64,000 nt of DNA from Macrostomum lignano. Lineage: Eukaryota. Numbering within the stretch: the stretch's first letter is position 1; every line of letters begins with the position of its first letter. The stretch lies in contig NIVC01000168.1 of NCBI GenBank assembly GCA_002269645.1, positions 413,297 to 477,296 of the forward strand, in the 5' to 3' direction. The position numbers and the translations under genes were made by a program. Positions 6,001 to 52,130 of this stretch are shown in pieces. Below the pieces are notes generated by a model. That model did not search any database, was not told the DNA's origin, and saw only the letters and a list, made by a program, of their open reading frames with translations.

Positions 6001-9000
6001 CAAGTCTAGTGATTTTGACAAGTGCCTAGTAACTGGTCTCTAGTGCCGTTTCAAACGGTTTGTTGCACAAGTCTAGTGATTTTGACAAGTGCCTAGTAAC
6101 TGGTCTCTAGTGCCGTTTCAAACGGTTTGTTGCACAAGTCTAGTGATTTTGACAAGTGCCTAGTAACTGGTCTCTAGTGCCGTTTCAAACGGTTTGTTGC
6201 ACAAGTCTAGTGATTTTGACAAGTGCCTAGTAACTGGTCTCTAGTGCCGTTTCAAACGGTTTGTTGCACAAGTCTAGTGATTTTGACAAGTGCCTAGTAA
6301 CTGGTCTCTAGTGCCGTTTCAAACGGTTTGTTGCACAAGTCTAGTGATTTTGACAAGTGCCTAGTAACTGGTCTCTAGTGCCGTTTCAAACGGTTTGTTG
6401 CACAAGTCTAGTGATTTTGACAAGTGCCTAGTAACTGGTCTCTAGTGCCGTTTCAAACGGTTTGTTGCACAAGTCTAGTGATTTTGACAAGTGCCTAGTA
6501 ACTGGTCTCTAGTGCCGTTTCAAACGGTTTGTTGCACAAGTCTAGTGATTTTGACAAGTGCCTAGTAACTGGTCTCTAGTGCCGTTTCAAACGGTTTGTT
6601 GCACAAGTCTAGTGATTTTGACAAGTGCCTAGTAACTGGTCTCTAGTGCCGTTTCAAACGGTTTGTTGCACAAGTCTAGTGATTTTGACAAGTGCCTAGT
6701 AACTGGTCTCTAGTGCCGTTTCAAACGGTTTGTTGCACAAGTCTAGTGATTTTGACAAGTGCCTAGTAACTGGTCTCTAGTGCCGTTTCAAACGGTTTGT
6801 TGCACAAGTCTAGTGATTTTGACAAGTGCCTAGTAACTGGTCTCTAGTGCCGTTTCAAACGGTTTGTTGCACAAGTCTAGTGATTTTGACAAGTGCCTAG
6901 TAACTGGTCTCTAGTGCCGTTTCAAACGGTTTGTTGCACAAGTCTAGTGATTTTGACAAGTGCCTAGTAACTGGTCTCTAGTGCCGTTTCAAACGGTTTG
7001 TTGCACAAGTCTAGTGATTTTGACAAGTGCCTAGTAACTGGTCTCTAGTGCCGTTTCAAACGGTTTGTTGCACAAGTCTAGTGATTTTGACAAGTGCCTA
7101 GTAACTGGTCTCTAGTGCCGTTTCAAACGGTTTGTTGCACAAGTCTAGTGATTTTGACAAGTGCCTAGTAACTGGTCTCTAGTGCCGTTTCAAACGGTTT
7201 GTTGCACAAGTCTAGTGATTTTGACAAGTGCCTAGTAACTGGTCTCTAGTGCCGTTTCAAACGGTTTGTTGCACAAGTCTAGTGATTTTGACAAGTGCCT
7301 AGTAACTGGTCTCTAGTGCCGTTTCAAACGGTTTGTTGCACAAGTCTAGTGATTTTGACAAGTGCCTAGTAACTGGTCTCTAGTGCCGTTTCAAACGGTT
7401 TGTTGCACAAGTCTAGTGATTTTGACAAGTGCCTAGTAACTGGTCTCTAGTGCCGTTTCAAACGGTTTGTTGCACAAGTCTAGTGATTTTGACAAGTGCC
7501 TAGTAACTGGTCTCTAGTGCCGTTTCAAACGGTTTGTTGCACAAGTCTAGTGATTTTGACAAGTGCCTAGTAACTGGTCTCTAGTGCCGTTTCAAACGGT
7601 TTGTTGCACAAGTCTAGTGATTTTGACAAGTGCCTAGTAACTGGTCTCTAGTGCCGTTTCAAACGGTTTGTTGCACAAGTCTAGTGATTTTGACAAGTGC
7701 CTAGTAACTGGTCTCTAGTGCCGTTTCAAACGGTTTGTTGCACAAGTCTAGTGATTTTGACAAGTGCCTAGTAACTGGTCTCTAGTGCCGTTTCAAACGG
7801 TTTGTTGCACAAGTCTAGTGATTTTGACAAGTGCCTAGTAACTGGTCTCTAGTGCCGTTTCAAACGGTTTGTTGCACAAGTCTAGTGATTTTGACAAGTG
7901 CCTAGTAACTGGTCTCTAGTGCCGTTTCAAACGGTTTGTTGCACAAGTCTAGTGATTTTGACAAGTGCCTAGTAACTGGTCTCTAGTGCCGTTTCAAACG
8001 GTTTGTTGCACAAGTCTAGTGATTTTGACAAGTGCCTAGTAACTGGTCTCTAGTGCCGTTTCAAACGGTTTGTTGCACAAGTCTAGTGATTTTGACAAGT
8101 GCCTAGTAACTGGTCTCTAGTGCCGTTTCAAACGGTTTGTTGCACAAGTCTAGTGATTTTGACAAGTGCCTAGTAACTGGTCTCTAGTGCCGTTTCAAAC
8201 GGTTTGTTGCACAAGTCTAGTGATTTTGACAAGTGCCTAGTAACTGGTCTCTAGTGCCGTTTCAAACGGTTTGTTGCACAAGTCTAGTGATTTTGACAAG
8301 TGCCTAGTAACTGGTCTCTAGTGCCGTTTCAAACGGTTTGTTGCACAAGTCTAGTGATTTTGACAAGTGCCTAGTAACTGGTCTCTAGTGCCGTTTCAAA
8401 CGGTTTGTTGCACAAGTCTAGTGATTTTGACAAGTGCCTAGTAACTGGTCTCTAGTGCCGTTTCAAACGGTTTGTTGCACAAGTCTAGTGATTTTGACAA
8501 GTGCCTAGTAACTGGTCTCTAGTGCCGTTTCAAACGGTTTGTTGCACAAGTCTAGTGATTTTGACAAGTGCCTAGTAACTGGTCTCTAGTGCCGTTTCAA
8601 ACGGTTTGTTGCACAAGTCTAGTGATTTTGACAAGTGCCTAGTAACTGGTCTCTAGTGCCGTTTCAAACGGTTTGTTGCACAAGTCTAGTGATTTTGACA
8701 AGTGCTAAGTAACTGGTCTCTAGTGCCGTTTCAAACGGTTTGTTGCACAAGTCTAGTGATTTTGACAAGTGCCTAGTAACTGGTCTCTAGTGCCGTTTCA
8801 AACGGTTTGTTGCACAAGTCTAGTGATTTTGACAAGTGCCTAGTAACTGGTCTCTAGTGCCGTTTCAAACGGTTTGTTGCACAAGTCTAGTGATTTTGAC
8901 AAGTGCCTAGTAACTGGTCTCTAGTGCCGTTTCAAACGGTTTGTTGCACAAGTCTAGTGATTTTGACAAGTGCCTAGTAACTGGTCTCTAGTGCCGTTTC

Positions 9001-12000
9001 AAACGGTTTGTTGCACAAGTCTAGTGATTTTGACAAGTGCCTAGTAACTGGTCTCTAGTGCCGTTTCAAACGGTTTGTTGCACAAGTCTAGTGATTTTGA
9101 CAAGTGCCTAGTAACTGGTCTCTAGTGCCGTTTCAAACGGTTTGTTGCACAAGTCTAGTGATTTTGACAAGTGCCTAGTAACTGGTCTCTAGTGCCGTTT
9201 CAAACGGTTTGTTGCACAAGTCTAGTGATTTTGACAAGTGCCTAGTAACTGGTCTCTAGTGCCGTTTCAAACGGTTTGTTGCACAAGTCTAGTGATTTTG
9301 ACAAGTGCCTAGTAACTGGTCTCTAGTGCCGTTTCAAACGGTTTGTTGCACAAGTCTAGTGATTTTGACAAGTGCCTAGTAACTGGTCTCTAGTGCCGTT
9401 TCAAACGGTTTGTTGCACAAGTCTAGTGATTTTGACAAGTGCCTAGTAACTGGTCTCTAGTGCCGTTTCAAACGGTTTGTTGCACAAGTCTAGTGATTTT
9501 GACAAGTGCCTAGTAACTGGTCTCTAGTGCCGTTTCAAACGGTTTGTTGCACAAGTCTAGTGATTTTGACAAGTGCCTAGTAACTGGTCTCTAGTGCCGT
9601 TTCAAACGGTTTGTTGCACAAGTCTAGTGATTTTGACAAGTGCCTAGTAACTGGTCTCTAGTGCCGTTTCAAACGGTTTGTTGCACAAGTCTAGTGATTT
9701 TGACAAGTGCCTAGTAACTGGTCTCTAGTGCCGTTTCAAACGGTTTGTTGCACAAGTCTAGTGATTTTGACAAGTGCCTAGTAACTGGTCTCTAGTGCCG
9801 TTTCAAACGGTTTGTTGCACAAGTCTAGTGATTTTGACAAGTGCCTAGTAACTGGTCTCTAGTGCCGTTTCAAACGGTTTGTTGCACAAGTCTAGTGATT
9901 TTGACAAGTGCCTAGTAACTGGTCTCTAGTGCCGTTTCAAACGGTTTGTTGCACAAGTCTAGTGATTTTGACAAGTGCCTAGTAACTGGTCTCTAGTGCC
10001 GTTTCAAACGGTTTGTTGCACAAGTCTAGTGATTTTGACAAGTGCCTAGTAACTGGTCTCTAGTGCCGTTTCAAACGGTTTGTTGCACAAGTCTAGTGAT
10101 TTTGACAAGTGCCTAGTAACTGGTCTCTAGTGCCGTTTCAAACGGTTTGTTGCACAAGTCTAGTGATTTTGACAAGTGCCTAGTAACTGGTCTCTAGTGC
10201 CGTTTCAAACGGTTTGTTGCACAAGTCTAGTGATTTTGACAAGTGCCTAGTAACTGGTCTCTAGTGCCGTTTCAAACGGTTTGTTGCACAAGTCTAGTGA
10301 TTTTGACAAGTGCCTAGTAACTGGTCTCTAGTGCCGTTTCAAACGGTTTGTTGCACAAGTCTAGTGATTTTGACAAGTGCCTAGTAACTGGTCTCTAGTG
10401 CCGTTTCAAACGGTTTGTTGCACAAGTCTAGTGATTTTGACAAGTGCCTAGTAACTGGTCTCTAGTGCCGTTTCAAACGGTTTGTTGCACAAGTCTAGTG
10501 ATTTTGACAAGTGCCTAGTAACTGGTCTCTAGTGCCGTTTCAAACGGTTTGTTGCACAAGTCTAGTGATTTTGACAAGTGCCTAGTAACTGGTCTCTAGT
10601 GCCGTTTCAAACGGTTTGTTGCACAAGTCTAGTGATTTTGACAAGTGCTAAGTAACTGGTCTCTAGTGCCGTTTCAAACGGTTTGTTGCACAAGTCTAGT
10701 GATTTTGACAAGTGCCTAGTAACTGGTCTCTAGTGCCGTTTCAAACGGTTTGTTGCACAAGTCTAGTGATTTTGACAAGTGCCTAGTAACTGGTCTCTAG
10801 TGCCGTTTCAAACGGTTTGTTGCACAAGTCTAGTGATTTTGACAAGTGCCTAGTAACTGGTCTCTAGTGCCGTTTCAAACGGTTTGTTGCACAAGTCTAG
10901 TGATTTTGACAAGTGCCTAGTAACTGGTCTCTAGTGCCGTTTCAAACGGTTTGTTGCACAAGTCTAGTGATTTTGACAAGTGCCTAGTAACTGGTCTCTA
11001 GTGCCGTTTCAAACGGTTTGTTGCACAAGTCTAGTGATTTTGACAAGTGCCTAGTAACTGGTCTCTAGTGCCGTTTCAAACGGTTTGTTGCACAAGTCTA
11101 GTGATTTTGACAAGTGCCTAGTAACTGGTCTCTAGTGCCGTTTCAAACGGTTTGTTGCACAAGTCTAGTGATTTTGACAAGTGCCTAGTAACTGGTCTCT
11201 AGTGCCGTTTCAAACGGTTTGTTGCACAAGTCTAGTGATTTTGACAAGTGCCTAGTAACTGGTCTCTAGTGCCGTTTCAAACGGTTTGTTGCACAAGTCT
11301 AGTGATTTTGACAAGTGCCTAGTAACTGGTCTCTAGTGCCGTTTCAAACGGTTTGTTGCACAAGTCTAGTGATTTTGACAAGTGCCTAGTAACTGGTCTC
11401 TAGTGCCGTTTCAAACGGTTTGTTGCACAAGTCTAGTGATTTTGACAAGTGCCTAGTAACTGGTCTCTAGTGCCGTTTCAAACGGTTTGTTGCACAAGTC
11501 TAGTGATTTTGACAAGTGCCTAGTAACTGGTCTCTAGTGCCGTTTCAAACGGTTTGTTGCACAAGTCTAGTGATTTTGACAAGTGCCTAGTAACTGGTCT
11601 CTAGTGCCGTTTCAAACGGTTTGTTGCACAAGTCTAGTGATTTTGACAAGTGCCTAGTAACTGGTCTCTAGTGCCGTTTCAAACGGTTTGTTGCACAAGT
11701 CTAGTGATTTTGACAAGTGCCTAGTAACTGGTCTCTAGTGCCGTTTCAAACGGTTTGTTGCACAAGTCTAGTGATTTTGACAAGTGCCTAGTAACTGGTC
11801 TCTAGTGCCGTTTCAAACGGTTTGTTGCACAAGTCTAGTGATTTTGACAAGTGCCTAGTAACTGGTCTCTAGTGCCGTTTCAAACGGTTTGTTGCACAAG
11901 TCTAGTGATTTTGACAAGTGCTAAGTAACTGGTCTCTAGTGCCGTTTCAAACGGTTTGTTGCACAAGTCTAGTGATTTTGACAAGTGCCTAGTAACTGGT

Positions 12001-12056
12001 CTCTAGTGCCGTTTCAAACGGTTTGTTGCACAAGTCTAGTGATTTTGACAAGTGCC
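1..12056. repeat. 67-bp tandem satellite, about 180 near-identical copies, running off the left edge of the window
   Basis: Unit GTAACTGGTCTCTAGTGCCGTTTCAAACGGTTTGTTGCACAAGTCTAGTGATTTTGACAAGTGCCTA. Phase recurs exactly at 1741, 5761 and 9781 (4020 = 60 x 67). A rare GTGCTAAGT variant occurs, and the few indels are confined to the first ~1.2 kb. Confidence 0.99.
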
Positions 12057-13989: not shown

Positions 13990-14795
13990 TAGGCTTGGAT
14001 AGCGACTCAGGTGACGAATCATACGTGACTGCATCTGGTGGAGGCTAAAAAGGTCCAGACTGTGAATCCGCCAGACAACATCGGAGCTAACTGGCATGAT
14101 ACTGCACTCCGGAAACGGATAATCGGCCCAAAGCACTTCCCGAGTTTCTCGGCTCGCTTGGTCTGCGTCCGGATTTTCTTGTGCCGGACAACATTGAAAA
14201 TTGCATGGCTGCCATCCTTGGTCAGTTTCTTCCCGACAGTCTTCTGCAAAGTTTGTGCGCCTGGACAACCGCCAGAGCAGACAGGGCTGTTACGCATAGT
14301 CAACAAGAAAACGGAGAGCTGCCATGGAAGCTCCTAAATTGGAAGCCAGCATGCAGCCTGAATTAAATGCAGTTTATCGGGATTCCGCTGCACATGGGAG
14401 TAGTACAGAAGCCAGATATTAGCATGTATTGGTCAACCGATCTAATGCATCATCAGGACTTCTTCCTCTGAGTGATGTCTGTCGCGTAGCAGGTTCCATC
14501 TCACCATGACCTGGTTTCGCTGCTACGATTGCACGGAGGTTAAAGAAGCTGATCCGCTGTGCAAGATCGACCTTTTTTAAACAAAGTCCAGTCCATCTGT
14601 CAAAATAAGTACATGCAACTTCAAAATATTTCTGTTGACAAGTCATTGCTCCTTTACAAAGGTAGGCTCACTTTCTTCAGTACATGCCCAACAAAAAGGC
14701 AAAGCTCGTCACCAAGCTGTACTGTCCAGCCGAATCGAACAGTGGCTATCTGTGGAACTTTCTGATCCACTCCACTGCGGCCCAAAACAACCTGT
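13990..14795 (+). pseudogene. Decayed piggyBac (PGBD4-like) transposase fragment
   Basis: Frame-shifting peptides FIGIPLHMGVVQKPDISMYWSTD, RPFLNKVQSICQNKYMQLQNISVDKSLLLYKGRL and QYMPNKKAKLVTKLYCPAESNSGYLWNFLIH match piggyBac motifs (YWS, ISVDESLLLYKGRL, GYxWNFLIY). Multiple stops and frameshifts; no TTAA/TIR found. Confidence 0.85.
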
Positions 14796-15766
14796 TGGAA
14801 CTTTCTGATCCACTCCACTGCGGCCCAAAGCAACCTGTTGGAACTTTCTGATCCACTCCACTGTAGCCCAAAGCAACCTGTTGGAACTTTCTGATCCACT
14901 CCACTGTAGCCCAAAACAACCTGTTGGAACTTTCTGATCCACTCCACTGCAGCCCAAAACAACCTGTTGGAACTTTCTGATCCACTCCACTGCGGCCCAA
15001 AGCAACCTGTTGGAACTTTCTGATCCACTCGACTGTAGCCCAAAACAACCTGTTGGAACTTTCTGATCCACTCGACTGCAGCCCAAAACAACCTGTTGGA
15101 ACTTTCTGATCCACTCCACTGCGGCCCAAAGCAACCTGTTGGAACTTTCTGATCCACTCCACTGCGGCCCAAAGCAACCTGTTGGAACTTTCTGATCCAC
15201 TCCACTGTAGCCCAAAACAACCTGTTGGAACTTTCTGATCCACTCCACTGCGGCCCAAAGCAACCTGTTGGAACTTTCTGATCCACTCCACTGTAGCCCA
15301 AAACAACCTGTTGGAACTTTCTGATCCACTCCACTGCAGCCCAAAACAACCTGTTGGAACTTTCTGATCCACTCGACTGCAGCCCAAAACAACCTGTTGG
15401 AACTTTCTGATCCACTCGACTGCGGCCCAAAGCAACCTGTTGGAACTTTCTGATTCACTCGACTGCGGCCCAAAGCAACCTGTTGGAACTTTCTGATCCA
15501 CTCGACTGCGGCCCAAAGCAACCTGTTGGAACTTTCTGATTCACTCGACTGCGGCCCAAAGCAACCTGTTGGAACTTTCTGATCCACTCGACTGCGGCCC
15601 AAAGCAACCTGTTGGAACTTTCTGATCCACTCGACTGCAGCCCAAAACAACCTGTTGGAACTTTCTGATCCACTCCACTGCGGCCCAAAACAACCTGTTG
15701 GAACTTTCTGATCCACTCGACTGCGGCCCAAAGCAACCTGTTGGAACTTTCTGATCCACTCCACTG
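14753..15766. repeat. 43-bp minisatellite, about 23 copies, derived from piggyBac coding sequence
   Basis: Unit TGGAACTTTCTGATCCACTCCACTGCGGCCCAAAACAACCTGT. The first copy is contiguous with the transposase frame (GYL-WNFLIHSTAAQNNL). Confidence 0.95.
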
Positions 15767-15988
15767 ACCTTGACAAGGCTTCAAATTTTATGCCCGGAAA
15801 AGATACGAGTATAGATAACAACGCAGCAATTAATTTTTGCTTTCTGAATTCGATAATAGCATAGTTCGAGCAGTTTATGGTTGAAAGTTGATAAGATTAT
15901 TATATATTTAAAAAAGATTATAGGCAAAAACTACAAATAAGCTTTATCAAAAACATCTTCTCAACACGGCATTACAGTGACCCCGCAA

Positions 15989-16094
15989 TGCCAGCAGCGA
16001 TAGAAAGTAAATCGAGCACAAGCCAGTGCCCCAGAAATTCGGAACTGGGGCCAGAATTTTCTGACATGGCCGTCATGCGAATCAGCTGCTGACA
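15989..16094 (-). promoter_or_regulatory. SECIS element (type II-like) in the 3'UTR of the SELENOW-like gene
   Basis: Minus strand: helix I UGUCAGCAGC(U)GAU / AUCGCUGCUGGCA; core AUGAC...CGAU; helix II GGCCAUGUCAG / CUGGCUUGUGCU; unpaired AAAA; apical helix GCCCCAG / CUGGGGC. Folded by eye only. Confidence 0.75.
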
Positions 16095-16187
16095 AGGCGG
16101 AGGCCCAGACTTCAGGTGAGCACTCCTACTGAATCAGGGTTCTTACTTTACCTAACAGTACATTGCCCCTGCCTCTGAGTCCCCAGC

Positions 16188-16425
16188 TCAGCCTTTGCAG
16201 GCCGCCAGCACTGCGTCGGCAATCTTCTGGCAATCGGCGGCGGCCGGGAACCGCCCGGTCTGCAGCTTGGAGTACACCTGGCTGCCGTTGATGAACACCT
16301 CGAACTTGGACGTGGCGGTGGGCGTCGCCTCGTACGTGAAGTCCGCATTGTCGCCCGAACCGCCCAGCAGGTCCAGCAGCTCCTCTTTGAAGCGCCGGAA
16401 CCTGGGGGCGTAGCCTCAGGCTCCG
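16188..16425 (-). CDS. SELENOW: Selenoprotein W (Rdx family), coding exon 2; contains the Sec codon TGA at 16416-16418
   Basis: Acceptor ...TTAATCGCAG, then (TG|C) C-G-A-U-GYAPRFRRFKEELLDLLGGSGDNADFTYEATPTATSKFEVFINGSQVYSKLQTGRFPAAADCQKIADAVLAACKG*. The CxxU, FEV..G and SK motifs fit the SelW/MIEN1 Rdx fold; total length 88 aa. Confidence 0.92.
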
Positions 16426-16631
16426 CTGCGATTAAGATTGAATGGGAAATTGACAGGAAACTTATTTCATAATTCTCAAAGCTCTGGGATAAGCGCGAAA
16501 TTGTTCGCTTTTGATCAACTGAAAAGTCTTAAGGCTCAGGTGGAAAACTGCTCCAGTCACCGCTGGCATGAGAAATTTTATACGTTGTTGCTCTGAATTG
16601 TGCCTTCACAAGCTCGTAAAAATTGACTCAC

Positions 16632-16660
16632 CAGTAAACGACGTGCACCTTGACTACCAT
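16632..16660 (-). CDS. SELENOW: Selenoprotein W, coding exon 1 (MVVKVHVVY + TG)
   Basis: ATG at 16660; 29 nt ending TAC TG|GTGAGT; the phase-2 junction rebuilds the Cys codon with exon 2. Compare human SelW MALAVRVVYCGAUGY. A probable 5'UTR intron lies at 16727-16793. Confidence 0.88.
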
Positions 16661-16831: not shown

Positions 16832-17220
16832 GGAGGGGTCGGTCAGAACTGTGTGTACATTGGGGTGGGTGGAGGGGTCGGTTAGAGCTGTGTGTACATT
16901 GGAGTGAGTGGAGGGGTCGGTTAGAGCTGTGTGTACATTGGAGTGGATGGAGGGGTCGGTCAGAGCTGTGTGTACATTGGGGTGGGTGGAGGGGGTCGGT
17001 TAGAGCTGTGTGTACATTGGAATGAGTGGAGGGGTCGGTTAGAGCTGTGTGTACATTGGAGTGGATGGAGGGGTCGGTTAGAGCTGTGTGTACATTTGGG
17101 TGGGTGGAGAGGGTCGGTTAGAGCTGTGTGTACATTTGGGTGGGTGGAGAGGGTCGGTTAGAGCTGTGTACATTGGAATGAGTGGAGGGGTCGGTTAGAG
17201 CTGTGTACATTGGGATGGGT
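16832..17220. repeat. 39-bp G-rich minisatellite, about 10 copies
   Basis: Unit approximately GTGTGTACATTGGGGTGGGTGGAGGGGTCGGTTAGAGCT, with variants. Confidence 0.92.
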
Positions 17221-17961
17221 TGAGAGAGTGCAATGGGGTAGAGGGTTTCGATCAAGATGGTTGGTTGAAAAAGTTTACGCGATGCTATCCTGTTGGCATA
17301 AAGGTAACAAATCACAAAATGAGACGCAATTCTATACATCGGTAGGTGCAGGGCTGGTCTTCAAACAATGTATTTGAGTCGCCGGTTCCTATTACATGTA
17401 TGTTACCATCGCCAAAGGCTGCTGGTGATCTAACAAAAACAAAAAAACTGAAAGAAATCGCGTAAATAATCAATTAAAAAAACTGTTTGTGGACATGGCC
17501 AGGTAGGATTAGTATCGCTCTACGTTCTAAGTATACTCAGCAACATTGATAAGTCGCCACCCTTTGCCCCAGTGAGCATTGAAAAAACTTAAATGCTTGA
17601 AAAATCGATGAAAACCGGGCGGAAGCTTCAATCCATCCAATCTTCGCCCTCCGCTCTTCCCAATCCTCCTCACGCAGCCCAACTCTGCGTCGCGTGGCGC
17701 AAGTTGCGTCACTCAAAAGTCAATCCTGAGCTGGAATTTACTGCGCAATCTCAAAGGTGGCGAATTTTTAATGTTGTTGAGTACAAATCTGGAAAAGCAG
17801 TCATACATAAGGTGAATAAATTTAAGCGCGTTAAGTTAGTAAAAATCGAAGGCAAATGTGAGAAGCAAACTGAATGAACAAAAGCGAAATTTTCTTTGAA
17901 GTTTGCAAAAAATGAGAAAAAAAGGTTTAATTTAGGGATTGGGGAGACTGACGACGTTGAA

Positions 17962-18410
17962 TGGGCCTGAGTGTACATTGGGGACTGGGGAGGGGGCTGA
18001 ATTGGGCCAGAGTGTACATTGGGGACTGGGGAGGGGGCTGAATTGGGCCTGAGTGTACATTGGGGACTGGGGAGGGGGCTGAATTGGGCCAGAGTGTACA
18101 TTGGGGACTGGGTAGGGGGCTGAATTGGGCCAGAGTGTACATTGGGGACTGGGGAGGGGGCTGAATTGGGCCAGAGTGTACATTGGGGACTGGGGAGGGG
18201 GGCCAGAGTGTACATTGGGGACTGGGCAGGGGGGCCAGAGTGTACATTGGGGACTGGGGAGGGGGCTGAATTGGGCCAGAGTGTACATTGGGGACTGGGG
18301 AGGGGCTGAATTGGGCCAGAGTGTACATTGGGGACTGGGGAAGGGGCTGAATTGGGCCAGAGTGTACATTGGGGACTGGGGAGGGGGCTGAATTGGGCCA
18401 GAGTGTACAT
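17962..18410. repeat. 41-bp G-quadruplex-motif minisatellite, about 11 copies
   Basis: Unit GGGGACTGGGGAGGGGGCTGAATTGGGCCAGAGTGTACATT, with four G-runs of 3 or more in each full unit. Confidence 0.93.
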
Positions 18411-18874
18411 TTTGTGTGGCTACTGTGTAATTTGCGTACAAGGTAAGTGAGCTTAATTGCGTAGTAAGTTTTTTTTTGCGTTTCAATTTCAATGCGTTTT
18501 GAGCAGTGATTTTCTAGCATTTAACACAAATCTGATCAGCTCGTGCCGCTGAAGATTTTACTAGTCCGAAATCTCTGCTCAGCTCATTAATAATAAGCCG
18601 CTTGAAACAAAAAGTCAACTAAAAATCTACAGAGGAATGAAACGCACCAACAGCCCCGGGTAAGGAGAAATGCGAAATTAACGACACGAATACAGAGACG
18701 AGCGCAAGCAGAGATCCGGCCTCAGAGAACTGCATGGACGCAAAAATTAAGAACAGAAATCTTCAAAAGAATGAATTAAAAATTTTAAAGATCGCTTTGA
18801 CTGCATAGTTCGTTTGCTGCTTTCTATTAAGACGATTTAAACTGAAAAGTAAAGGCGGAGTGCCGGCACAGCCC

Positions 18875-19287
18875 GAGGATCTGAGAGGCTAGCCCAGCAA
18901 CTGAGGATCTGAGAGGCTGGCCCAGCAACTGAGGATCTGAGAGGCTGGCCCAGCAACTGAGGATTTGAGAGGCTGGCCCAGCAACTGAGGATCTGAGAGG
19001 CTGGCCCAGCAACTGAGGATCTGAGAGGCTGGCCCAGCAACTGAGGATCTGGGAGGCTGGCCCAGCAACTGAGGATCTGGGAGGCTGGCCCAGCAACTGG
19101 GGATCTGAGAGGCTGGCCCAGCAACTGAGGATCTGAGAGGCTGGCCCAGCAACTGAGGATCTGGGAGGCTGGCCCAGCAACTGAGGATCTGGGAGGCTGG
19201 CCCAGCAACTGGGGATCTGGGAGGCTGGCCCAGCAACTGAGGATCTGGGAGACTGGCCCAGCAACTGAGGATATGGGAGGCTGGCCC
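18875..19287. repeat. 28-bp minisatellite, about 15 copies, just 3' of the BTBD9 stop
   Basis: Unit GGCTGGCCCAGCAACTGAGGATCTGAGA. Confidence 0.95.
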
Positions 19288-19395
19288 ATTGTTAATGAAT
19301 TATACCTACTTAGCGGCTGAGCCTCAGTTAGTTACCGTGTAATACGAGTTATTACACGAAATACACGGAAACGGTCAAGCTAGGCCAAATAGCGC

Positions 19396-19926
19396 TCACT
19401 CAGTAGAGCCAGGCTTGGCAGTGGCCCAGCTAGGATGGCCATCGTATTGCTGCTGCTGTTGCTGCTGCGAGCCGCTGGGAGCGGCAGAGGCTGCCATCGC
19501 CGTGGCGGCAGCAGCAGCGCCACCGCTCCGCCCGTGCCCAAAGGACACCAGCGAGCTGGACCGGCTCGCCGGGCCGTCCGCCTGGTCTGCCAGCGCCTCC
19601 ACCGAGCTGGCGCCGTCGCCTTCGTAAGTCGCTGCCGCCACCGTCGCTGCTGCTGACGTGCCCGAAGCTGCAGGCAGACCCGCCTGCTGCTGCTGCTGCT
19701 GAAGCGGCGGCGGCTGCCTCGCCAGGTGGTCGCGCAGAGCCTGCGGCTCGCACGGGCACTGGAAGTGCACTACGTGGAACACCTCGTTGGCAGTGTTCAT
19801 GGTGCCGATGATGCGGACGAAGACCACTGGCCTGGGGGAGAATGTGGTCACCTGCCAGGAGCGACAGGGCGTGCGGCTGGCGTCCCAGACTCGATCCCAG
19901 TGCGTCTGGTCGCAGCTGGTGTCCAC
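19396..19926 (-). CDS. BTBD9: BTB/POZ domain-containing protein 9, coding exon 6 (last)
   Basis: Acceptor CCCCCAG|GTG GAC. VDTSCDQTHWDRVWDASRTPCRSWQVTTFSPRPVVFVRIIGTMNTANEVFHVVHFQCP matches the BTBD9 C-terminal F5/8C-like domain (CKSWQ...FIRIVGTHNTANEVFHCVHFECP), followed by a Q/A/S-rich tail and TGA. Confidence 0.95.
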   Translation of the reverse strand: MDTSCDQTHWDRVWDASRTPCRSWQVTTFSPRPVVFVRIIGTMNTANEVFHVVHFQCPCEPQALRDHLARQPPPLQQQQQQAGLPAASGTSAAATVAAATYEGDGASSVEALADQADGPASRSSSLVSFGHGRSGGAAAAATAMAASAAPSGSQQQQQQQYDGHPSWATAKPGSTE

Positions 19927-19969
19927 CTGGGGGTTAGAGTGGGAGTCCATGTGATATTTTCCTATGTAT

Positions 19970-20916
19970 GGTACACCTGTGACAGGAATTCTATCATGTA
20001 CACCTGTGATAGGAATTCTATGGTGATAGGAATTCTATCATGTACACCTGTGATAGGAATTCTATGGTGTACACCTGTGATGTATTCTATGGTGTACACC
20101 TGTGATAGGAATTCTATGGTTTACACCTGTGATAGTAATTCTATCATGCACACCTGTGATAGGAATTCTATGGTGTACACCTGTGATAGGTATTCTATGG
20201 TGTACACCGGTGATAGGAATTCTATGGTGTACACCTGTGACAGGAATTCTATGGTGTACACCTGTGATAGGAATTCTATGGTGTACACCTGTGATAGGAG
20301 TTCTATGGTGTACACCTGTGATAGGAATTCTATGGTGTACACCTGTGATGTATTCTATGGTGTACACCGGTGATAGGAATTCTATGGTGTACACCTGTGA
20401 CAGGAATTCTATGGTGTACACCTGTGATAGGAGTTCTATGGTGTACACCTGTGATAGGAGTTCTATGGTGTACACCTGTGATAGGAATTCTATGGTGTAC
20501 ACCTGTGATAGTAATTCTATCATGCACACCTGTGATAGGAATTCTATGGTGTACACCTGTGATAGGAATTCTATGGTGTACACCGGTGATAGGAATTCCA
20601 TGGTGTACACCTGTGATAGGAATTCTATGGTGTACACCTGTGATAGGAGTTCTATGGTGTACACCTCTGATAGGAATTCTATGGTGTACACCTGTGATAG
20701 GAATTCTATGGTGTACACCTGTGACAGGAATTCTATCATGCACACCTGTGATAGGAATTCTATGGTGTACACCTGTGATAGGAATTCTATGGTGTACACC
20801 TGTGATAGGAATTCTATGGTGTACACCTGTGATAGGTATTCTATGGTGTACACCTGTGACAGGAATTCTATCATGCACACCTGTGATAGGAATTCTATCT
20901 TGTACACCTGTAATAG
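19970..20916. repeat. 27-bp minisatellite, about 35 copies, filling BTBD9 intron 5
   Basis: Unit GATAGGAATTCTATGGTGTACACCTGT; on the sense (minus) strand it reads ...TTCCTATCACAG|GTGTACACCATAGAA. Confidence 0.97.
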
Positions 20917-20992
20917 AAGTCCAACTAACAATTGCGAATTCTAAGGAAACGTCCTGGCAGCAACAATCCCAAAAAAAAGACAGCCCACTAAC

Positions 20993-21433
20993 AGTGTAGG
21001 AGTAGGCTCTCTGGTCCAGATCCCACAGAAGCAGCTGCATGGAGCCGATGTAGTAGGGCTGGGACAGCTGCACAACAATGGCGCCATTGCCCAGCTGGTG
21101 GCAGGTGTAGCCGGAGTCCCAGTCGTAATTCTTTGTGTCGCCGTTAATTAGAGCGTTGCGCAACCTGCTAACGCCTTCGATAACGCAGGCGGACTTTGCT
21201 ACGGTAGCCACATTCTCCTCCGGCGTTATGAGCCCGTCAGTGAGCACGAACTGGCGTCTGGTGTAGAAAGCCTCCAGCGCCACACAGTGGAACACCCGGT
21301 TGACTGTGTTGTGCGTGCCCACTATGCGGATGTACCGCACCACCCGCTCGGGGAAGTACAGCTCCTGCCAGCTGCGGCACAGGTAGGCCCGGTGGTCGAT
21401 CACCTGGACCCAATCCGTCTCGTTGATGCTCAC
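20993..21433 (-). CDS. BTBD9: BTBD9 coding exon 5
   Basis: 147 codons, VSINETDWVQVIDHRAYLCRSWQELYFPERVVRYIRIVGTHNTVNRVFH...GDTKNYDWDSGYTCHQLG...RAYSYT; CAG acceptor and ACT|GTTAGT donor, phase 0. Confidence 0.97.
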
Positions 21434-21467
21434 CTGATGGTGTTGGGGAGGGGGCTATTTATTGAGC

Positions 21468-22040
21468 CTCACCTTACTATAGTAGCTATGACTCACTTCA
21501 GTATAGTAGCTATATGAATCACCTCAGTATAGCAGCTATATGACTCACCTCAGTATAGCAGCTATATGACTCACCTCAGTATAGCAGCTATATGACTCAC
21601 CTCAGTATAGCAGCTATATGACTCACCTCAGTATAGCAGCTATATGACTCACCTCAGTATAGCAGCTATATGACTCACCTCAGTATAGCAGCTATATGAC
21701 TCACCTCAGTATAGCAGCTATATGACTCACCTCAGTATAGTATTGAAGCTATATGACTCACCTCAGTATAGCAGCTATATGACTCACCTCAGTATAGCAG
21801 CTATATGACTCACCTCAGTATAGTATTGAAGCTATATGACTCACCTCAGTATAGCAGCTATATGACTCACCTCAGTATAGCAGCTATATGACTCACCTCA
21901 GTATAGCAGCTATATGACTCACCTTAGTATAGTAGCTATTTAGTTATAGATGACTCACCGGCATATGGTAGCTATGATTTACCCCAAAATAACTCACCCC
22001 AACATAGTAGCTATATGACTCACCTCAATATAGTAACTAT
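21468..22040. repeat. 26-bp minisatellite in BTBD9 intron 4, made of copies of the exon 4 donor junction
   Basis: Unit TGACTCACCTCAGTATAGCAGCTATA; sense strand TATAGCTGCTATACTGAG|GTGAGTCA; about 18 GTGAGT copies. Confidence 0.95.
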
Positions 22041-22311
22041 AGGACCTGGTGTCCTTGTCCCACAGAAGCAGTCGCAGCAGGTTAATGATGGAAGGTTGGC
22101 CGAGCTTTACTACAATGCAGCCATTCTTATCATCTATTGGGTGCCGAGTGAAGCCGCGGTCCAGATCGTAGTTGACGGTGTCCCCGTCCAGCAGGACGAC
22201 CCGGCACTCGCCTTTGGTCACCTGGGCGCCGTGGCGGATAGTGGCCAGGTTTTCCTCGGGCAGCAGGATGCCTCGATACCGGAGTTCGCAGTCCTTGCGA
22301 GCGTTTTTCTC
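22024..22311 (-). CDS. BTBD9: BTBD9 coding exon 4
   Basis: 96 codons, EKNARKDCELRYRGILLPEENLAT...LLDGDTVNYDLDRGFTRHPIDD...KLGQPSIINLLRLLLWDKDTRSYSYYIE; CACAG acceptor and GAG|GTGAGT donor. Confidence 0.97.
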
Positions 22312-22328
22312 CTGTGGGCGGTTTAAAT

Positions 22329-23192
22329 CAGGTGATTAGAATCCCCAGGCGATTAGAATCCCCAGGCGATTAGAATCCCCAGGCGATTAGAATCCCCAGG
22401 CGATTTAGAATCCCCAATGCGATTAGAATCCTCAGGTGATTAGAATCCCCAGGCGATTAGAATCCCCAGGCGATCAGAATCCTCAGGTGATTAGAATCCT
22501 CAGGCAATTAGAATTTTAGGTGATTAGAATCCTCAGGTGATGGTTAGAATCCTCAGGTGATGATTAGAATCCTCGTGCAATGGCTAGAATCCACAGGTGA
22601 TGCTCAGAGTCATCAGGTGATTAGAATCCTCAGGTGATGGTTAGAATCCTTAGGTAATGATTAGAATCCTCAGGTAATGATTAGAATCCTCAGGTGATGA
22701 TTAGAATCCTCAGGTGATGATTAGAATCCACAGGTGATGCTCAGAGTCATCAGGTGATTAGAATCCTCAGGTGATTAGAATCCTCAGGCAATTAGAATTT
22801 TAGGTGATTAGAATCCTCAGGTGATAGTTAGAATCCTCAGGTGATGATAAGAATCCTCGTGCAATGGCTAGAATCCACAGGTGATGCTCAGAGTCATCAG
22901 GTGATTAGAATCCTCAGGTGATGGTTAGAATCCTTAGGTAATGATTAGAATCCTCAGGTAATGATTAGAATCCTCAGGTGATGATTAGAATCCTCAGGTG
23001 ATGATTAGAATCCACAGGTGATGCTCAGAGTCATCAGGTGATTAGAATCCTCAGGTGATGGTTAGAATCCTTAGGTAATGATTAGAATCCTCAGGTGATG
23101 GTTAGAATCCTTAGGTAATGATCAGAATCCTCGGGTGATGATTAGAATCCTTAGGTAATGATTAGAATCCTCAGGTGATGATTAGAATCCTC
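22329..23192. repeat. 17-20-bp variable minisatellite with higher-order blocks in BTBD9 intron 3
   Basis: Core GATTAGAATCCTCAGGTGAT; longer blocks such as GCAATGGCTAGAATCCACAGGTGATGCTCAGAGTCATC recur. Confidence 0.93.
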
Positions 23193-23240
23193 GAGTAATT
23201 ATTTCGAGACCAGCAACTGTCTAAGGCAGCGAAGCCTCAC

Positions 23241-23576
23241 CTGAATGGCATCTAGCAAGGCATCCGGGCTGATCTGGCCGCTGGGCCGCACGGTGTGAAG
23301 CAAGTCAGACAGACTGATCAGCTCGAGTCGAAGACAGGCATAGATGCTGCGCGCCTCAACAGGCGTCAGTTCGTTTGGCGGACGGGCGAGGCACCAGGCG
23401 CGCACAGCGTTGAATATCTGGCATTCGTCAGCGAAGAAGCTGTCCCGCGAGATGAGCTGCACCAGGGCCTGGCGGGACAGGCTCAGGAAGCCGGCGCTGG
23501 CGCTGCTGACCAGCGACACCTGCTGCTGATGAGGCTGGAGATGCTGAGGCTCAGGGCTGTTCGCTGCGATGATTGG
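23241..23576 (-). CDS. BTBD9: BTBD9 coding exon 3 (BACK domain)
   Basis: 112 codons including GFLSLSRQALVQLISRDSFFADECQIF...RLELISLSDLLHTVRPSGQISPDALLDAIQ; TTGCAG acceptor and CAG|GTGAGG donor. Confidence 0.93.
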
Positions 23577-23716
23577 CTGCAAGGAAGTGAGCATGGAAGG
23601 AAGACTCGGTAAAATCCATAGAACAAAGATCAATTTATTAATAAAGTTGGTTGCTCGGAAATAATTTTGATTCTTTCAAATCAAGCCCATAGAAGGTATT
23701 AAAAACATTTAGCCAC

Positions 23717-23950
23717 CTGCTGCTGCTGAGAAGTGTTGAGCACGGACTCAAGAATTTTGCTGGCATTTCGGTCGAGAAACTCCAAACAGGTGGAGCATAG
23801 AGACGACAGACTGTAGGCAGTAGCCAAATTGTACACCAGCGCTATGTTGTTGTGGGTCAGACTGGCTTTGAGAAACTCGGACAGAGCTGTCTCCAGTTGG
23901 ACAAAGTTGAATTGGTGAGCCAGGCCTAGGAGGTCCAAGATGGCGTCCTC
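23717..23950 (-). CDS. BTBD9: BTBD9 coding exon 2
   Basis: 78 codons, EDAILDLLGLAHQFNFVQLETALSEFLKASLTHNNIALVYNLATAYSLSSLCSTCLEFLDRNASKILES...QQQQ; TAG acceptor. The donor CAG|GTGGCT is the most plausible one, but the exact end is less certain. Confidence 0.88.
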
Positions 23951-24466
23951 CTATAGAGTTTGTTTTGTGGTTTAATAGGTTTTTAGAGTTTACTAGCAAT
24001 CTTTGCCCCCCCCCCCCAATGGAAAAAGCAATAGAAAAAGCAAACAAAGTATAAGCAGACATGCCACTTTCTTAACTATGGACTATATGAACAAGATATA
24101 GGCAATATATGTTCCTGGCGAAATTCAAAAATTGGGGGCATGTTTTTTGAAAATTTGTTTTTTGGCAATTTAAAAGCAATAAAGCTAAAAAATAAATTTA
24201 TTTGAGTTTTAAAAAGTTAGAAACATCTATAAAAGCACAAATTATTCACATATAGCCTTATTTTTAATAAAATGATTTGTAGATTATTTGTAGAAATTAC
24301 TGTAGAAGCCAGGTAACACATTGGAAGTCCTATAAGGATCAGAAAAATTGCATTTTACTCAGCTTCTACAGAAGCAATTTGGAAAATTCTTTCTTCTCGC
24401 ATATATGCCACGATGATACATATTTTAGTGTAATTTCATTGTTCTTTGTCACTTAATAAGCATATA

Positions 24467-25716
24467 TTCAGTTGGGGAGAAAGTTCCCGCAGTTTCTAGA
24501 ACTTTCTGTCTAAGAACTTTCTGGGACATTCCAGAGCCCAGCTGTGTGGGTATATATTGAGGGTGGGTGTGTGTGATTCTAACATGCTATTTAAACCAAA
24601 GAGATTACTCACTAGTCAGCAGCATTATGGATCTCTCTCGGGCCTATATTTGTGGTCTCCTGCTCTACGACTTCAAATCTGGACTGTCAGCCGCAGAATC
24701 CAGCCGCTGCATCAACGCTGCATTTGGTGCGGGTACTGTGTTTGAAAGCACTGCCCAGGACTGGTTTGCGCGGTTTTGCCAGGGAAATTTTAACCTCGAA
24801 GATTTGCCCCAGTCAGGCCATCCCTCCAAGGTTGATGACGACCGGCTGCGCAGACTCGTAGAGGCTGACCCTCGGCAAACCACGCGTGAGTTAGCGCAAG
24901 TCCTTGATGTAGACCATAAAATGGTCACCAGTCATTTGCATCAGCTGGGCAAGGTGGTACAAGCTGGCACAATGGGTACCCCACCAATTGTCAGATTGGG
25001 ACAAGGAGCGCAGGGCAGAGGTGGCCACTTCTCTCCTCTCCTACAGGCGCACGCACAACTGGCTGAAGTCCATCGTTATAGGCAATGAAAAGTGGTGCCT
25101 GTACGTCAACATCAAATGTCGACGATTATAGGTTGATGCTGACGCGACACCTGAGCTGCAGCCAAAGTCCGGACTCTACCCATGCAAGGTCATGCTGTGC
25201 GTGTGGTGGGACTGCAAGGGCATCATCTACTACGAACTGCTGCCACCCAACACATTGATTATAGCCGACCTATACTGCCAACAGCTAGACCGATTGGCCG
25301 CCGCCATTGCACAGAAGCATCCAAACCATGGCCTGGTACGATTCCTCTATGATAACGCTCGTCCACACACGAGCTAGGGTGACTCGCCAAAAGCTACTGG
25401 ACCTTGGCTGGGAATTTGTGCCCCATCCACCATATTCACCAGACTTGGCACCAAGCGACTATCACCTGTTTTTGTCTCTGGCCAACGCCTTGAACAACAA
25501 AACCTTCGCTGATGATGAAGAGCTTGATAACTGGCTGAACAACTTTTTCACTTCAAAGCCAGAGAAATTTTACAGTGATGGTATTATGAGTCTGCCTGAA
25601 AAATGGCAGAAGGTGATCGATTGTGATGGTGATTATTTTGTTTCTTAATTGGCTTTTTTTTAAAAACTGTTTGACAGAAAGTTCTAGAAACCGTGGGAAC
25701 TTTCTCCCCAACCAAA
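24467..25716 (+). mobile_element. Full-length but inactivated mariner (DD34D) transposon in BTBD9 intron 1
   Basis: TIRs TTCAGTTGGGGAGAAAGTTCCC and revcomp TTTGGTTGGGGAGAAAGTTCCC, TA at both ends, 1250 bp. Transposase 24626-25648 has WVPH, GNEKW (first D changed to N), DNARPH and HPPYSPDLAPSDY, with two frameshifts and an internal stop. Confidence 0.96.
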
Positions 25717-26149
25717 TAGTAAGCATTTGATTTGGATACTGGGTTCACATTTTGTGGTACCATTTTTACCAAAAAATTTAAGTCTAAATATAAGCATATC
25801 ACATACACTAATACTATGCAAGTTGATATTTTAATGAAAGAAAACAACTTGACAATTTTTTTCAACAAGGAATTAGCAGTATATTTACTTTTAGAGAAAG
25901 ACAAGCTGTTAAAACCCGCGGATTTTGAACCCGGGGAATTCCAATCCCGGAACTATTTTTGCATATTGAGATTAAACTCAAACAAAAACATTTATTAGTT
26001 GGGATAGAGTTAAACATAAAATAGAGTACATTCGTGTAAAATTAGGATTTGGGGCAAACATTGATATTGTTGGCTGGGGTGCTGCGCAGAATGTCAGGAA
26101 AACTCTGGCCTCTACCTTTGCCTCTCCCTATTTCCATTGCATCCTTTGA

Positions 26150-27730
<1,581 letters not shown>

Positions 27731-28439
27731 TCTATTTCTTTTCACTCTCATCTGGCCCGTAGCCATGAGCTGGATTCTTTATCTGGCCTTTGAGATAAAA
27801 ATCTGCCGATCCCTGCTTCGAAAGCCAGTTTGTGGGACGTAGTACTATCATGGTTGTTATCATTTCCCATGCTTTAATCACGTCATCTTTCTGGTCAATT
27901 AGCAGCCCTGAGAGAAATTTGTATATCTCCAGCTCCACCACCACAGTCTGCAGCAGTCTAACAACCATGGAAATACGCATTTCTTAGGAGGCCATTTAAA
28001 TTTTAAAGTACCTTATGCGAATCTTAATGTTAAAATTTTTATGGTGTAACTTATTTAGTAGGATTGCATTGTAATAAGTTATTCATTAATTTTTCGATAT
28101 TTTTATAAACCATCCCACATCGCCTTGATTTGCCATCCTTGTTTAACTGCTGCAGACTTGTCCATTCAGAGGAAAGGAAAGTGGTTTAAAATTGAATCTC
28201 TCGCTAAACTGTCTCTCCTCTCCACGCCTCTCCACTCGCGGGGGTGCAGAGAAGGCTATTAAAAAGTTATTCCAAAACACTGTACATTCGCTATGTACAT
28301 TCAGTCCTATCGCCTGACCCTTCGTCTGAGCTGGGGGAATGAGTGAGTGAGCGGCACAAACAACAGAAAAAGCAGACAAACTTCACATGCTTACAGTTTC
28401 TGTCCTGATTGAGATACAGAGTTGAGACTTTACATGTAG

Positions 28440-41238: not shown

Positions 41239-41362
41239 GTGAGCAGTTACTCAGTTTTCATGTGTATTATTGGTATTGATAGCTCGAAATCGTCTCAAGT
41301 CGAGACTGGGATCTCATTCGTCCCAGAGATATGAAATCCCCCATATTTGCCGATTTCCGCAG

Positions 41363-52053: not shown

Positions 52054-52130
52054 GTTAGACCATCCTTAGTGCTGTACATGTACGACATATATGTACATAA
52101 ATACTGTCAATAAAGCTCCAGGATGTGTCT

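What the first reader, a model, noticed from the sequence alone, without database searches (positions are those of the whole stretch)
16188..16660. Hidden selenoprotein: SelW-family gene with an in-frame UGA, missed by the ORF track
Seen: two exons splice (TG|C) to give MVVKVHVVYCGA-UGA-GYAPRF...FEVFINGSQVYSKLQTGRFP..., 88 aa, with the UGA exactly at the CxxU redox position and a SECIS-like fold about 320 nt downstream. Established: human SELENOW is ...VVYCGAUGY..., and Sec recoding needs a 3'UTR SECIS. The C-terminal half (VYSKLQTGRFP) looks MIEN1/SelW2-like while the N-terminus is SelW-like, which is informative for Rdx family evolution. Standard pipelines typically truncate or miss such genes.
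Basis: partly seen in the sequence, partly recalled or inferred. Interest (0 to 1): 0.75.

Follow-up and report, generated by a model that had tools for sequence, protein, structure and literature searches.

The report
Two-exon selenoprotein W gene
This is a genuine small selenoprotein W gene of an unidentified animal, whose in-frame UGA encodes selenocysteine; it is a well-known kind of gene that ordinary gene finders tend to truncate, so it is correct but not surprising.

Summary
On the minus strand, a 29-nt exon (16660-16632, ATG..TG) splices through a 206-nt GT-AG intron to a 238-nt exon (16425-16188). This gives an 88-codon frame with one in-frame TGA (16418-16416) at the U of a CGAU motif.

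- **Family:** the product matches Pfam Rdx (E 3e-14). Its best solved-structure match is mouse selenoprotein W (E 4e-9).
- **UGA in relatives:** 104 of about 124 family members fetched carry UGA at the same column. I confirmed this in DNA for several.
- **Intron position:** the split TG|Y inside the Cys codon is identical in a coral, a snail, a crab and a catfish SelW gene.
- **SECIS:** a type-2 SECIS-like stem-loop (16094-15989) lies 112 nt after the stop and 340 nt after the Sec codon. It is the best such structure on either strand of the window. Neither Rfam nor a small home-made covariance model scores it, and its 3' core is CGAU rather than the KGAW consensus.
- **MIEN1-like C-terminus:** the resemblance is real (48% identity against 32% to mouse SelW). 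Bacterial Rdx proteins and 10 of 124 SelW relatives share it, so it looks ancestral.

Verdict: a real SelW-family selenoprotein gene and a new member of a known kind, of modest interest. The organism was not identified.

The parts
16632..16660 (-). Coding exon 1: ATG GTA GTC AAG GTG CAC GTC GTT TAC TG (MVVKVHVVY plus the first two bases of Cys10). The start context is cagtcATGg.
   Evidence: The peptide is identical to exon 1 of the catfish SelW gene in L009.
16426..16631 (-). Intron 1, 206 nt, GTGAGT...CGCAG, phase 2 inside the Cys codon, 40% GC.
   Evidence: The same intron position (TG|Y) occurs in Porites L007, Petrolisthes L006, two Bulinus copies in L010 and Bagarius L009.
16188..16425 (-). 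Coding exon 2: C GGA GCC TGA GGC TAC ... AAA GGC TGA. It runs from the third base of Cys10 to the stop codon at 16190-16188, with no further intron. GC3 is 0.91.
   Evidence: tblastn 16424-16191, E 6e-49.
16416..16418 (-). In-frame TGA, codon 13: the selenocysteine position of the C10-G-A-U13 redox motif.
   Evidence: This column is UGA (called W) in 104 of about 124 family hits. TGA was confirmed in the DNA of L001-L005 and L011 and of L006, L007, L009 and L010.
15989..16094 (-). Candidate type-2 SECIS in the 3'UTR. Helix I pairs 16094-16085 with 15998-15989. The 5' core AUGA is at 16076-16073. Helix II has 10 bp with three single-base bulges. The unpaired AAAA is at 16060-16057, 12 nt after the core. 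A 7-bp mini-stem with a 10-nt loop spans 16051-16028. The 3' core GA is at 16013-16012, in the context CGAU.
   Evidence: It is the best-scoring SECIS-pattern fold on either strand of the 64-kb window (-21.1 kcal/mol for the upper part). The SECIS-constrained fold is -43.0 against an MFE of -47.0 kcal/mol. Rfam does not detect it, and the home-made model scores it at only 6.8 bits.

Best explanation
This is a functional two-exon gene for an 88-residue selenoprotein W-family (Rdx/thioredoxin-like) protein of a metazoan genome. The mRNA is spliced inside the Cys10 codon. Codon 13 (UGA) is recoded to selenocysteine, giving a C-G-A-U redox centre at the start of helix 1. The inferred recoding route is the standard eukaryotic one: a type-2 SECIS stem-loop in the 3'UTR (16094-15989) recruits SBP2 and eEFSec/Sec-tRNA[Ser]Sec. 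A second UGA at codon 89 terminates translation. Shown here: the gene model, family membership, UGA orthology, intron orthology and a SECIS-compatible structure in the right place. Inferred only: transcription, actual Sec insertion, and the redox (thiol/selenol oxidoreductase, glutathione-linked) function known for SelW.
For: - **Gene model:** intact ATG, a consensus GTGAGT donor, a pyrimidine-rich CAG acceptor, and an open frame with a single internal TGA.
- **Family:** Pfam Rdx E 3.2e-14, above the curated cut-off. The best PDB sequence match is mouse selenoprotein W 2npb, E 4e-9 over residues 1-85; MIEN1 scores 2.8e-4.
- **Relatives:** a profile search found 325 relatives. Of those fetched, 104 carry UGA (translated as W by the gene caller) at the same column and only 2-3 carry Cys. 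TGA was verified in their DNA.
- **Intron position:** the phase-2 split TG|Y of the Cys codon is identical in coral, snail (two copies), crab and catfish SelW genes.
- **Native gene:** codon GC3 of 0.87-0.91 fits the neighbouring host genes (0.64-0.82), so the gene belongs to this genome and is not decayed.
- **SECIS:** AUGA-C-N11-AAAA...GA with a 10-bp helix II, mini-stem and helix I. It is the top SECIS-pattern candidate in 128 kb of sequence, with only one other at or below -18 kcal/mol. It lies 112 nt 3' of the stop on the correct strand. The same AUGAC-N11/12-AAA core layout appears downstream of relatives' SelW genes.
- **Control:** Rfam also misses the SECIS of relatives that must have one, so its silence says little.
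Against: - No covariance model supports the SECIS. Rfam gives nothing at gathering score or at E<=10. A model built from five relatives' SECIS gives 6.8 bits, below the window's noise of 13 bits.
- The 3' core reads CGAU, whereas the published consensus is KGAW (PMC3753652).
- Helix II needs three single-base bulges, and the unconstrained MFE (-47.0) prefers a slightly different pairing from the SECIS fold (-43.0).
- There are no expression data, no close orthologue (best identity about 50%), and no Sec machinery gene or tRNA-Sec inside the window.
- The organism is unknown.
Confidence: 0.88

Rival explanations
1. The SelW gene is real, but the hairpin at 16094-15989 is not its SECIS. The true SECIS would lie elsewhere, further downstream beyond the 43-bp minisatellite or in a spliced 3'UTR, or the gene has lost it.
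For: Rfam and the home-made covariance model do not score the hairpin. The 3' core is CGAU rather than KGAW. The MFE prefers another pairing by 4 kcal/mol. In Porites the best SECIS candidate lies 1.2 kb after the stop, so distant SECIS elements occur in this family.
Against: A scan of the minus strand from 16187 down to 11500 found no other credible candidate; the next best was -4.1 kcal/mol. The hairpin is the best SECIS-pattern fold in the whole window and has every qualitative feature: AUGA, a 12-nt spacing to AAAA, GA, helix I and a mini-stem.
Confidence: 0.12
2. It is a recently inactivated SelW pseudogene, or a gene whose UGA simply terminates translation after 12 residues.
For: There is no expression evidence. 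The gene sits between minisatellites in a repeat-rich region. No close orthologue was available for a test of purifying selection.
Against: The 75 codons after the UGA are open. They match the family profile at conserved positions (GY, TP, FEV, G, SK). They also keep strong host-like codon bias, GC3 0.91 against 40% GC in the intron and flanks. The splice sites, start codon and SECIS-like element are all intact. UGA is the normal state of this column in the family.
Confidence: 0.05
3. A chance open frame, or foreign (algal or protist) contaminant DNA, that merely resembles SelW.
For: The closest relatives by identity (about 50%) include metagenomic picoeukaryote-like contigs and an algal SelW1.
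Against: The gene lies within a contiguous animal-type locus containing BTB/BACK, TB2/DP1/HVA22, XendoU and mariner sequences. Its codon bias matches its neighbours. Its intron position is shared with metazoan SelW genes, whereas the protist-like contigs are intronless. The match statistics (E 3e-14 to 6e-17) exclude chance.
Confidence: 0.01

Closest known systems
Selenoprotein W (SELENOW/SelW1; mouse structure PDB 2npb)
   Same: Same size (88 aa against 88-89). Same CxxU motif at residues 10-13 (VVYCGAUGY). The whole length aligns (E 4e-9). Both have a Pfam Rdx domain, a UGA at the same column and a SECIS in the 3'UTR. The first intron splits the Cys codon at the same base as in fish, snail, crab and coral SelW genes.
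   Different: Only one intron. The crab, coral, snail and catfish genes have further introns, for example straight after GYxPK or after KLDI. The post-beta4 loop reads QTGRFP instead of the usual NGDGYVD (112 of 124 relatives). Identity to any sequence found is about 50% or less. The SECIS is type 2 with a CGAU 3' core.
MIEN1 (C17orf37; I take this to be the Rdx12 of the literature, from my own knowledge) and the SelW2 lineage
   Same: The C-terminal part, FEVFINGSQVYSKLQTGRFP, resembles MIEN1 [20 protein letters not shown]. Identity is 48% in that part, against 32% to mouse SelW. Published work derives Rdx12 from SelW2 (PMC3316567).
   Different: MIEN1 has Cys, not Sec, in a CxxC motif, and its N-part is only 22% identical. 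The overall E-value is 2.8e-4 against 4e-9 for SelW. The window protein ends ...AACKG with no CaaX box; MIEN1's CaaX box is from my own knowledge. No labelled SelW2 references were available, so SelW2 membership is untested.
Bacterial SelW-related Rdx proteins (e.g. Vibrio, PDB 2p0g)
   Same: Rdx domain, a CxxC/U motif after beta1, and the GGFP motif after beta4. The C-part is 39% identical.
   Different: These are prokaryotic, intronless Cys forms with E 2.8e-5. The window gene is spliced and uses a eukaryotic 3'UTR SECIS.
Two-Sec (UxxU) SelW variants
   Same: Same family and length. They were found among the relatives here (L011: VY*GA*GY) and have been reported for amphioxus (PMC3473315).
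   Different: The window gene has TGC (Cys) at the first position of the motif, so it is a standard CxxU form.

Membership tests
Selenoprotein W / Rdx family | Rdx (SelT/SelW/SelH) domain detectable by profile | tested here: met
   PF10262 E 3.2e-14, 53.3 bits against a cut-off of 22.6, covering residues 4-77.
Selenoprotein W / Rdx family | CxxU (or CxxC) redox motif directly after the first beta-strand | tested here: met
   C10-G-A-U13 aligns with the YCG[AG]UGY column block of 84 relatives. C10, G11 and Y15 are invariant.
Selenoprotein W / Rdx family | In-frame UGA orthologous to the Sec codon of family members | tested here: met
   104 of about 124 hits have UGA (printed as W) at this column. 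DNA was verified in 10 loci.
Selenoprotein W / Rdx family | Small single-domain protein of about 85-90 residues | tested here: met
   88 residues. The relatives are mostly 83-92 residues.
Selenoprotein W / Rdx family | Eukaryotic SECIS element in the 3'UTR (UGAN/KGAW core, helix II, unpaired A's) | tested here: inconclusive
   A pattern and energy scan finds a type-2 candidate at 16094-15989, the best in the window. Against it: Rfam gives no hit, the home-made model gives 6.8 bits, and the 3' core is CGAU, not KGAW.
Selenoprotein W / Rdx family | Metazoan SelW gene structure: phase-2 intron inside the Cys codon of CxxU | tested here: met
   TG|C in the window. TG|T or TG|C in Porites, Petrolisthes, Bulinus (two copies) and Bagarius.
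Selenoprotein W / Rdx family | Thioredoxin-like beta-alpha-beta-beta-beta-alpha fold | not testable with these tools
The only support is the full-length sequence alignment to the solved SelW structure 2npb.
Selenoprotein W / Rdx family | Actual selenocysteine incorporation and expression | not testable with these tools
   No transcript, ribosome-profiling or proteomic data are available. The window holds no tRNA gene.
MIEN1 / Rdx12 | Cys in place of Sec (CxxC) with no SECIS | tested here: not met
   Codon 13 is TGA and a SECIS-like element is present.
MIEN1 / Rdx12 | C-terminal CaaX prenylation box (from my own knowledge of MIEN1) | tested here: not met
   The protein ends ...LAACKG-stop.
MIEN1 / Rdx12 | SKL-x-x-G-x-FP motif after beta4 | tested here: met
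   YSKLQTGRFP against MIEN1 [10 protein letters not shown]. The motif is also present in a Vibrio Rdx protein and in 10 of 124 SelW relatives, so it is not diagnostic.
SelW2 (vertebrate paralogue group) | Phylogenetic grouping with fish, frog and shark SelW2 rather than SelW1 | not tested
   No labelled SelW2 references were available in the tools. With 88 alignable columns and about 50% identity to everything, a tree would be poorly resolved.

The most novel reading that the evidence does not exclude
The gene could be a Sec-containing invertebrate representative of the lineage that gave rise to vertebrate SelW2 and its Cys derivative Rdx12/MIEN1, marked by the SKLxxGxFP motif. That would place the SelW1/SelW2 split before the vertebrates. 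A more speculative extra: the terminator UGA sits three residues after Cys86 (C-K-G-UGA), only about 94-112 nt upstream of the SECIS. Occasional recoding there would create a second, C-terminal CxxU.
Probability: 0.12. Interest if true: 0.4.

Novelty: new member of a known kind. Interest (0 to 1): 0.25.

Why it matters
It adds one correctly modelled SelW-family selenoprotein gene to an animal genome in which automatic annotation would probably truncate or skip it. The public records fetched here show the problem:

- The Petrolisthes protein starts after the UGA.
- The Bagarius model reads into intron 1 and skips the UGA exon.
- The Porites and Bulinus models are partial or garbled.

The gene also implies that this organism keeps the selenocysteine machinery. 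The exact conservation of the intron inside the Cys codon from cnidarians to vertebrates, with loss of all later introns here, is a small but clean marker for Rdx-family gene evolution. None of this changes current understanding of SelW.

Tried and rejected
- **Rfam:** at gathering score on the whole window and at E<=10 on 15300-16300 there was no SECIS hit. A control showed that Rfam also misses the SECIS of relatives with a conserved UGA, so I treat the negative as uninformative.
- **Ungapped helix scan:** it found no SECIS. A constrained-fold scan allowing small bulges did.
- **Home-made covariance model:** built from five relatives' SECIS (A5, R1). It aligns to the same element at only 6.8 bits, below the window noise, so the test is inconclusive. 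The model is of type-1 elements and the window's element is type 2.
- **Word-indexed homologue searches:** searching with C or W at the Sec position found nothing. Only the exhaustive search and the profile search worked.
- **Organism identification failed:** exact look-ups of 11 window ORFs and pattern scans of metagenome and prokaryote-genome collections with the 67-bp satellite and a SelW exon fragment all came back empty.
- **Catfish SECIS:** no candidate turned up within 1 kb of the annotated gene end in L009.
- **Explanations rejected:** a chance ORF, a contaminant, and genome-wide UGA=Trp. On the last point, the gene itself ends at a UGA at the position where the family ends.

Full report
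**1. Observation**

- ATG at 16660.
- Exon 1: ATG GTA GTC AAG GTG CAC GTC GTT TAC TG, ending at 16632.
- Donor GTGAGT.
- A 206-nt intron of 40% GC, ending ...CTTAATCGCAG.
- Exon 2 from 16425: C GGA GCC TGA GGC TAC GCC...
- Terminator TGA at 16190-16188.

The CDS is 267 nt, or 88 codons. The only internal stop is the TGA at 16418-16416. GC3 is 0.87. The start context (cagtcATGg) is good. Without the splice, the exon-2 frame upstream of the UGA reads ...NLNRSGA, which is not SelW-like, and it is closed by stops. The short exon 1 is therefore required.

**2. Family**

With Cys substituted for U, the product hits Pfam Rdx (PF10262) at E 3.2e-14. In the PDB it aligns end to end with mouse selenoprotein W (2npb, E 4e-9). 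Next come a Vibrio SelW-related protein (2p0g, 2.8e-5) and human MIEN1/C17orf37 (2ljk, 2.8e-4). A family profile finds only this one locus in the six-frame translation of the window.

**3. Relatives and the UGA**

Word-indexed searches found nothing. An exhaustive phmmer search with the 75 residues after the UGA found small proteins reading ...YCG[AG]WGY.... A profile search then returned 325 relatives.
- Of the sequences fetched, 104 have W at the Sec column and 2-3 have Cys.
- The W is a gene-caller artefact for UGA. The DNA of L001-L005 reads TGA in frame, as do the coral, crab, catfish and snail loci.
- Several relatives also end at a UGA that the caller read through (for example P0005 and P0006). 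A UGA terminator, as here, is therefore common in the family.
- Best identity to the window protein is only about 50%, so no close orthologue is in these databases.

**4. Gene structure as independent evidence**

The intron splits the Cys codon of CxxU after its second base in every metazoan SelW locus examined.

| Locus | Exon 1 end and donor | Acceptor and exon 2 start |
|---|---|---|
| Window | TAC TG\|gtgagt | cgcag\|C GGA GCC TGA |
| Porites lobata (L007) | TAT TG\|gtaagt | aatag\|T GGT GGA TGA |
| Petrolisthes cinctipes (L006) | TAT TG\|gtaatt | tttcag\|T GGT GCC TGA |
| Bulinus truncatus (L010), copy with exon 1 at 10417 (the other copy splits the same way) | TAT TG\|gtatgt | ttcag\|C GGA GCA TGA |
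| Bagarius yarrelli (L009) | TAC TG\|gtaagt | cctag\|T GGT GGA TGA |

The catfish exon-1 peptide, MVVKVHVVY(C), is identical to the window's. The other animals have at least one more intron, either straight after GYxPK or after KLDI. The window gene has none, so its later introns were lost. The picoeukaryote-like metagenomic relatives are intronless.

**5. SECIS**

- Rfam gives no SECIS hit at gathering score on the window or at E<=10 on 15300-16300. It also misses the SECIS of relatives with a conserved UGA, so this negative carries little weight.
- The proximal 3'UTR contains a single ATGA, at 16076.
- A constrained-fold scan (AUGA...GA, helix II of at least 8 bp with small bulges, unpaired AA 9-14 nt after the core) returns one strong candidate on the minus strand between 16187 and 11500.
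- Its layout is AUGA-C, then a 10-bp helix II (GGC/CA/GUCAG pairing with CUGGC/UG/GCU), then AAAA 12 nt after the core, then a 7-bp mini-stem (GCCCCAG/CUGGGGC) with a 10-nt loop, then 3' CGAU.
- The same scan over both strands of the whole window ranks it first at -21.1 kcal/mol. Only one other candidate falls at or below -18, and it lies inside a mariner remnant. Finding such a candidate by chance within a few hundred nt of the stop on the right strand has a probability of roughly 1-2%.
- With helix I (16094-16085 pairing with 15998-15989), the SECIS-constrained fold is -43.0 kcal/mol against an MFE of -47.0. The region folds better than its shuffles (z -2.8).
- Relatives show the same core layout downstream of their stops:
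  - L001: AUGAC-N12-AAAA
  - Porites: AUGAC-N11-AAAAA
  - both Bulinus copies: AUGAC-N11-AAAG
  - Petrolisthes: GUGAA-N11-AAAG
- Weak points:
  - The 3' core CGAU departs from the KGAW consensus (PMC3753652).
  - Helix II has three bulged bases.
  - A covariance model built from five relatives' (type-1) elements aligns to the same element at only 6.8 bits, below the window's noise.
- I rate the SECIS assignment at about 0.75-0.8.

**6. Context**

The window is animal-type DNA.
- A BTB/BACK gene (BTBD9-like by my reading) lies on the minus strand from about 33900 to 19396, directly upstream of SelW.
- There is a TB2/DP1/HVA22 exon, an XendoU exon and DDE/mariner remnants.
- These neighbours have GC3 of 0.64-0.82 in a roughly 40% GC background, so the SelW codon bias is native.
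- Minisatellites flank the gene: a 39-bp unit at 16832-17224 and a 43-bp unit at 14753-15766.
- There are no tRNA genes in the window.
- The organism could not be identified.

**7. The 'mosaic' remark**

| Comparison | N-part identity | C-part identity |
|---|---|---|
| Mouse SelW | 44% | 32% |
| MIEN1 | 22% | 48% |
| Vibrio Rdx protein | 25% | 39% |

The figures come, with the split placed at SKFEV. The resemblance centres on YSKLQTGRFP against [10 protein letters not shown]. The G(x)FP motif occurs in 10 of 124 SelW relatives. These include an algal SelW1, picoeukaryote-like contigs and the catfish protein. The other 112 have GDGYVD-type loops. Because bacterial Rdx proteins also carry the motif, the simplest reading is retention of an ancestral feature. 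Published work derives Rdx12 from SelW2 (PMC3316567), so a SelW2-lineage affinity cannot be excluded. I could not test it without labelled references.

**8. Comparison with what is known, and verdict**

SelW selenoproteins were found in all six invertebrate genomes surveyed by Jiang et al., and two-Sec SelW forms are already described (PMC3473315). I confirmed one UxxU form in L011. Misannotation of selenoproteins is a known problem (PMC3753652). It is visible in the public models fetched here: P0123, P0125, P0126 and P0127.

The finding is therefore a correct and well-supported identification of an ordinary kind of gene. It is a new member of a known kind. Confidence that it is a genuine SelW-family selenoprotein gene is 0.88, and interest is about 0.25.

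Noticed in passing
window 1-12056: A 67-bp satellite, about 180 head-to-tail copies at 99% identity, fills the first 12 kb. Its composition is uniform (GC 0.43, AT skew -0.21).
   Followed up: partly
window 14753-15766, 16832-17224, 17958-18411, 18875-19288: Four minisatellites (43-, 39-, 41- and 28-bp units) bracket the SelW gene and generate the long repetitive pseudo-ORFs in the ORF list. The 43-bp array starts only about 220 nt beyond the SECIS candidate.
   Followed up: partly
window 19396-33900, minus strand: A BTB/BACK gene (BTBD9-like by my reading) lies directly upstream of SelW. Its BTB exon is at 33499-33900, its BACK exon at 23199-23633 and large C-terminal exons at 20990-21433 and 19396-19950. 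One intron or exon border holds a tandem repeat (20062-20999) that yields ITGVHHR-type repeat ORFs on both strands.
   Followed up: partly
window 16188-16199, minus strand: The terminator is also UGA, and it sits three residues after a Cys (C86-K-G-UGA), about 94-112 nt upstream of the SECIS. Read-through would add UAGDSEAGAMYC and create a second CxxU. This is probably coincidence, because many relatives also end at UGA.
   Followed up: no
L011 278-535 (also P0050, P0054, P0093): Some SelW relatives have UGA at both the Cys and the Sec positions (VY*GA*GY, a UxxU motif). I confirmed this in DNA for L011. Two-Sec SelW has been reported before (PMC3473315).
   Followed up: partly
L006, L007, L009, L010 (public NCBI gene models P0125, P0127, P0123, P0126): The public annotations of SelW in a crab, a coral, a catfish and a snail are all wrong around the UGA. 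They start after it, read into intron 1, skip the UGA exon, or are partial. The Bulinus locus holds two SelW copies.
   Followed up: partly
L008 (metagenomic contig, 84 kb): Four intronless SelW-family genes lie in tandem within about 7 kb (1526-1807, 2855-3121, 6001-6273, 8230-8484).
   Followed up: no
window 24567-25648, 39666-40007, 59859-60323: Mariner/DDE-type transposase remnants. The second-best SECIS-pattern fold of the window (25515-25625, plus strand) lies inside one of them and is presumably spurious.
   Followed up: no
window 26049-27842: A strongly skewed low-complexity tract (GC skew -0.70, AT skew -0.60) includes a (CT)n-like run. It produces 440-600-aa Ser/Leu-rich pseudo-ORFs.
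   Followed up: no
window 40806-41279 (+), 57139-57816 (+), 51700-53276 (+): Other host exons: TB2/DP1/HVA22 (REEP-like, E 2.8e-28), XendoU endoribonuclease (E 6.7e-49), and a signal-peptide-bearing leucine-rich-repeat-like ORF pair.
   Followed up: partly
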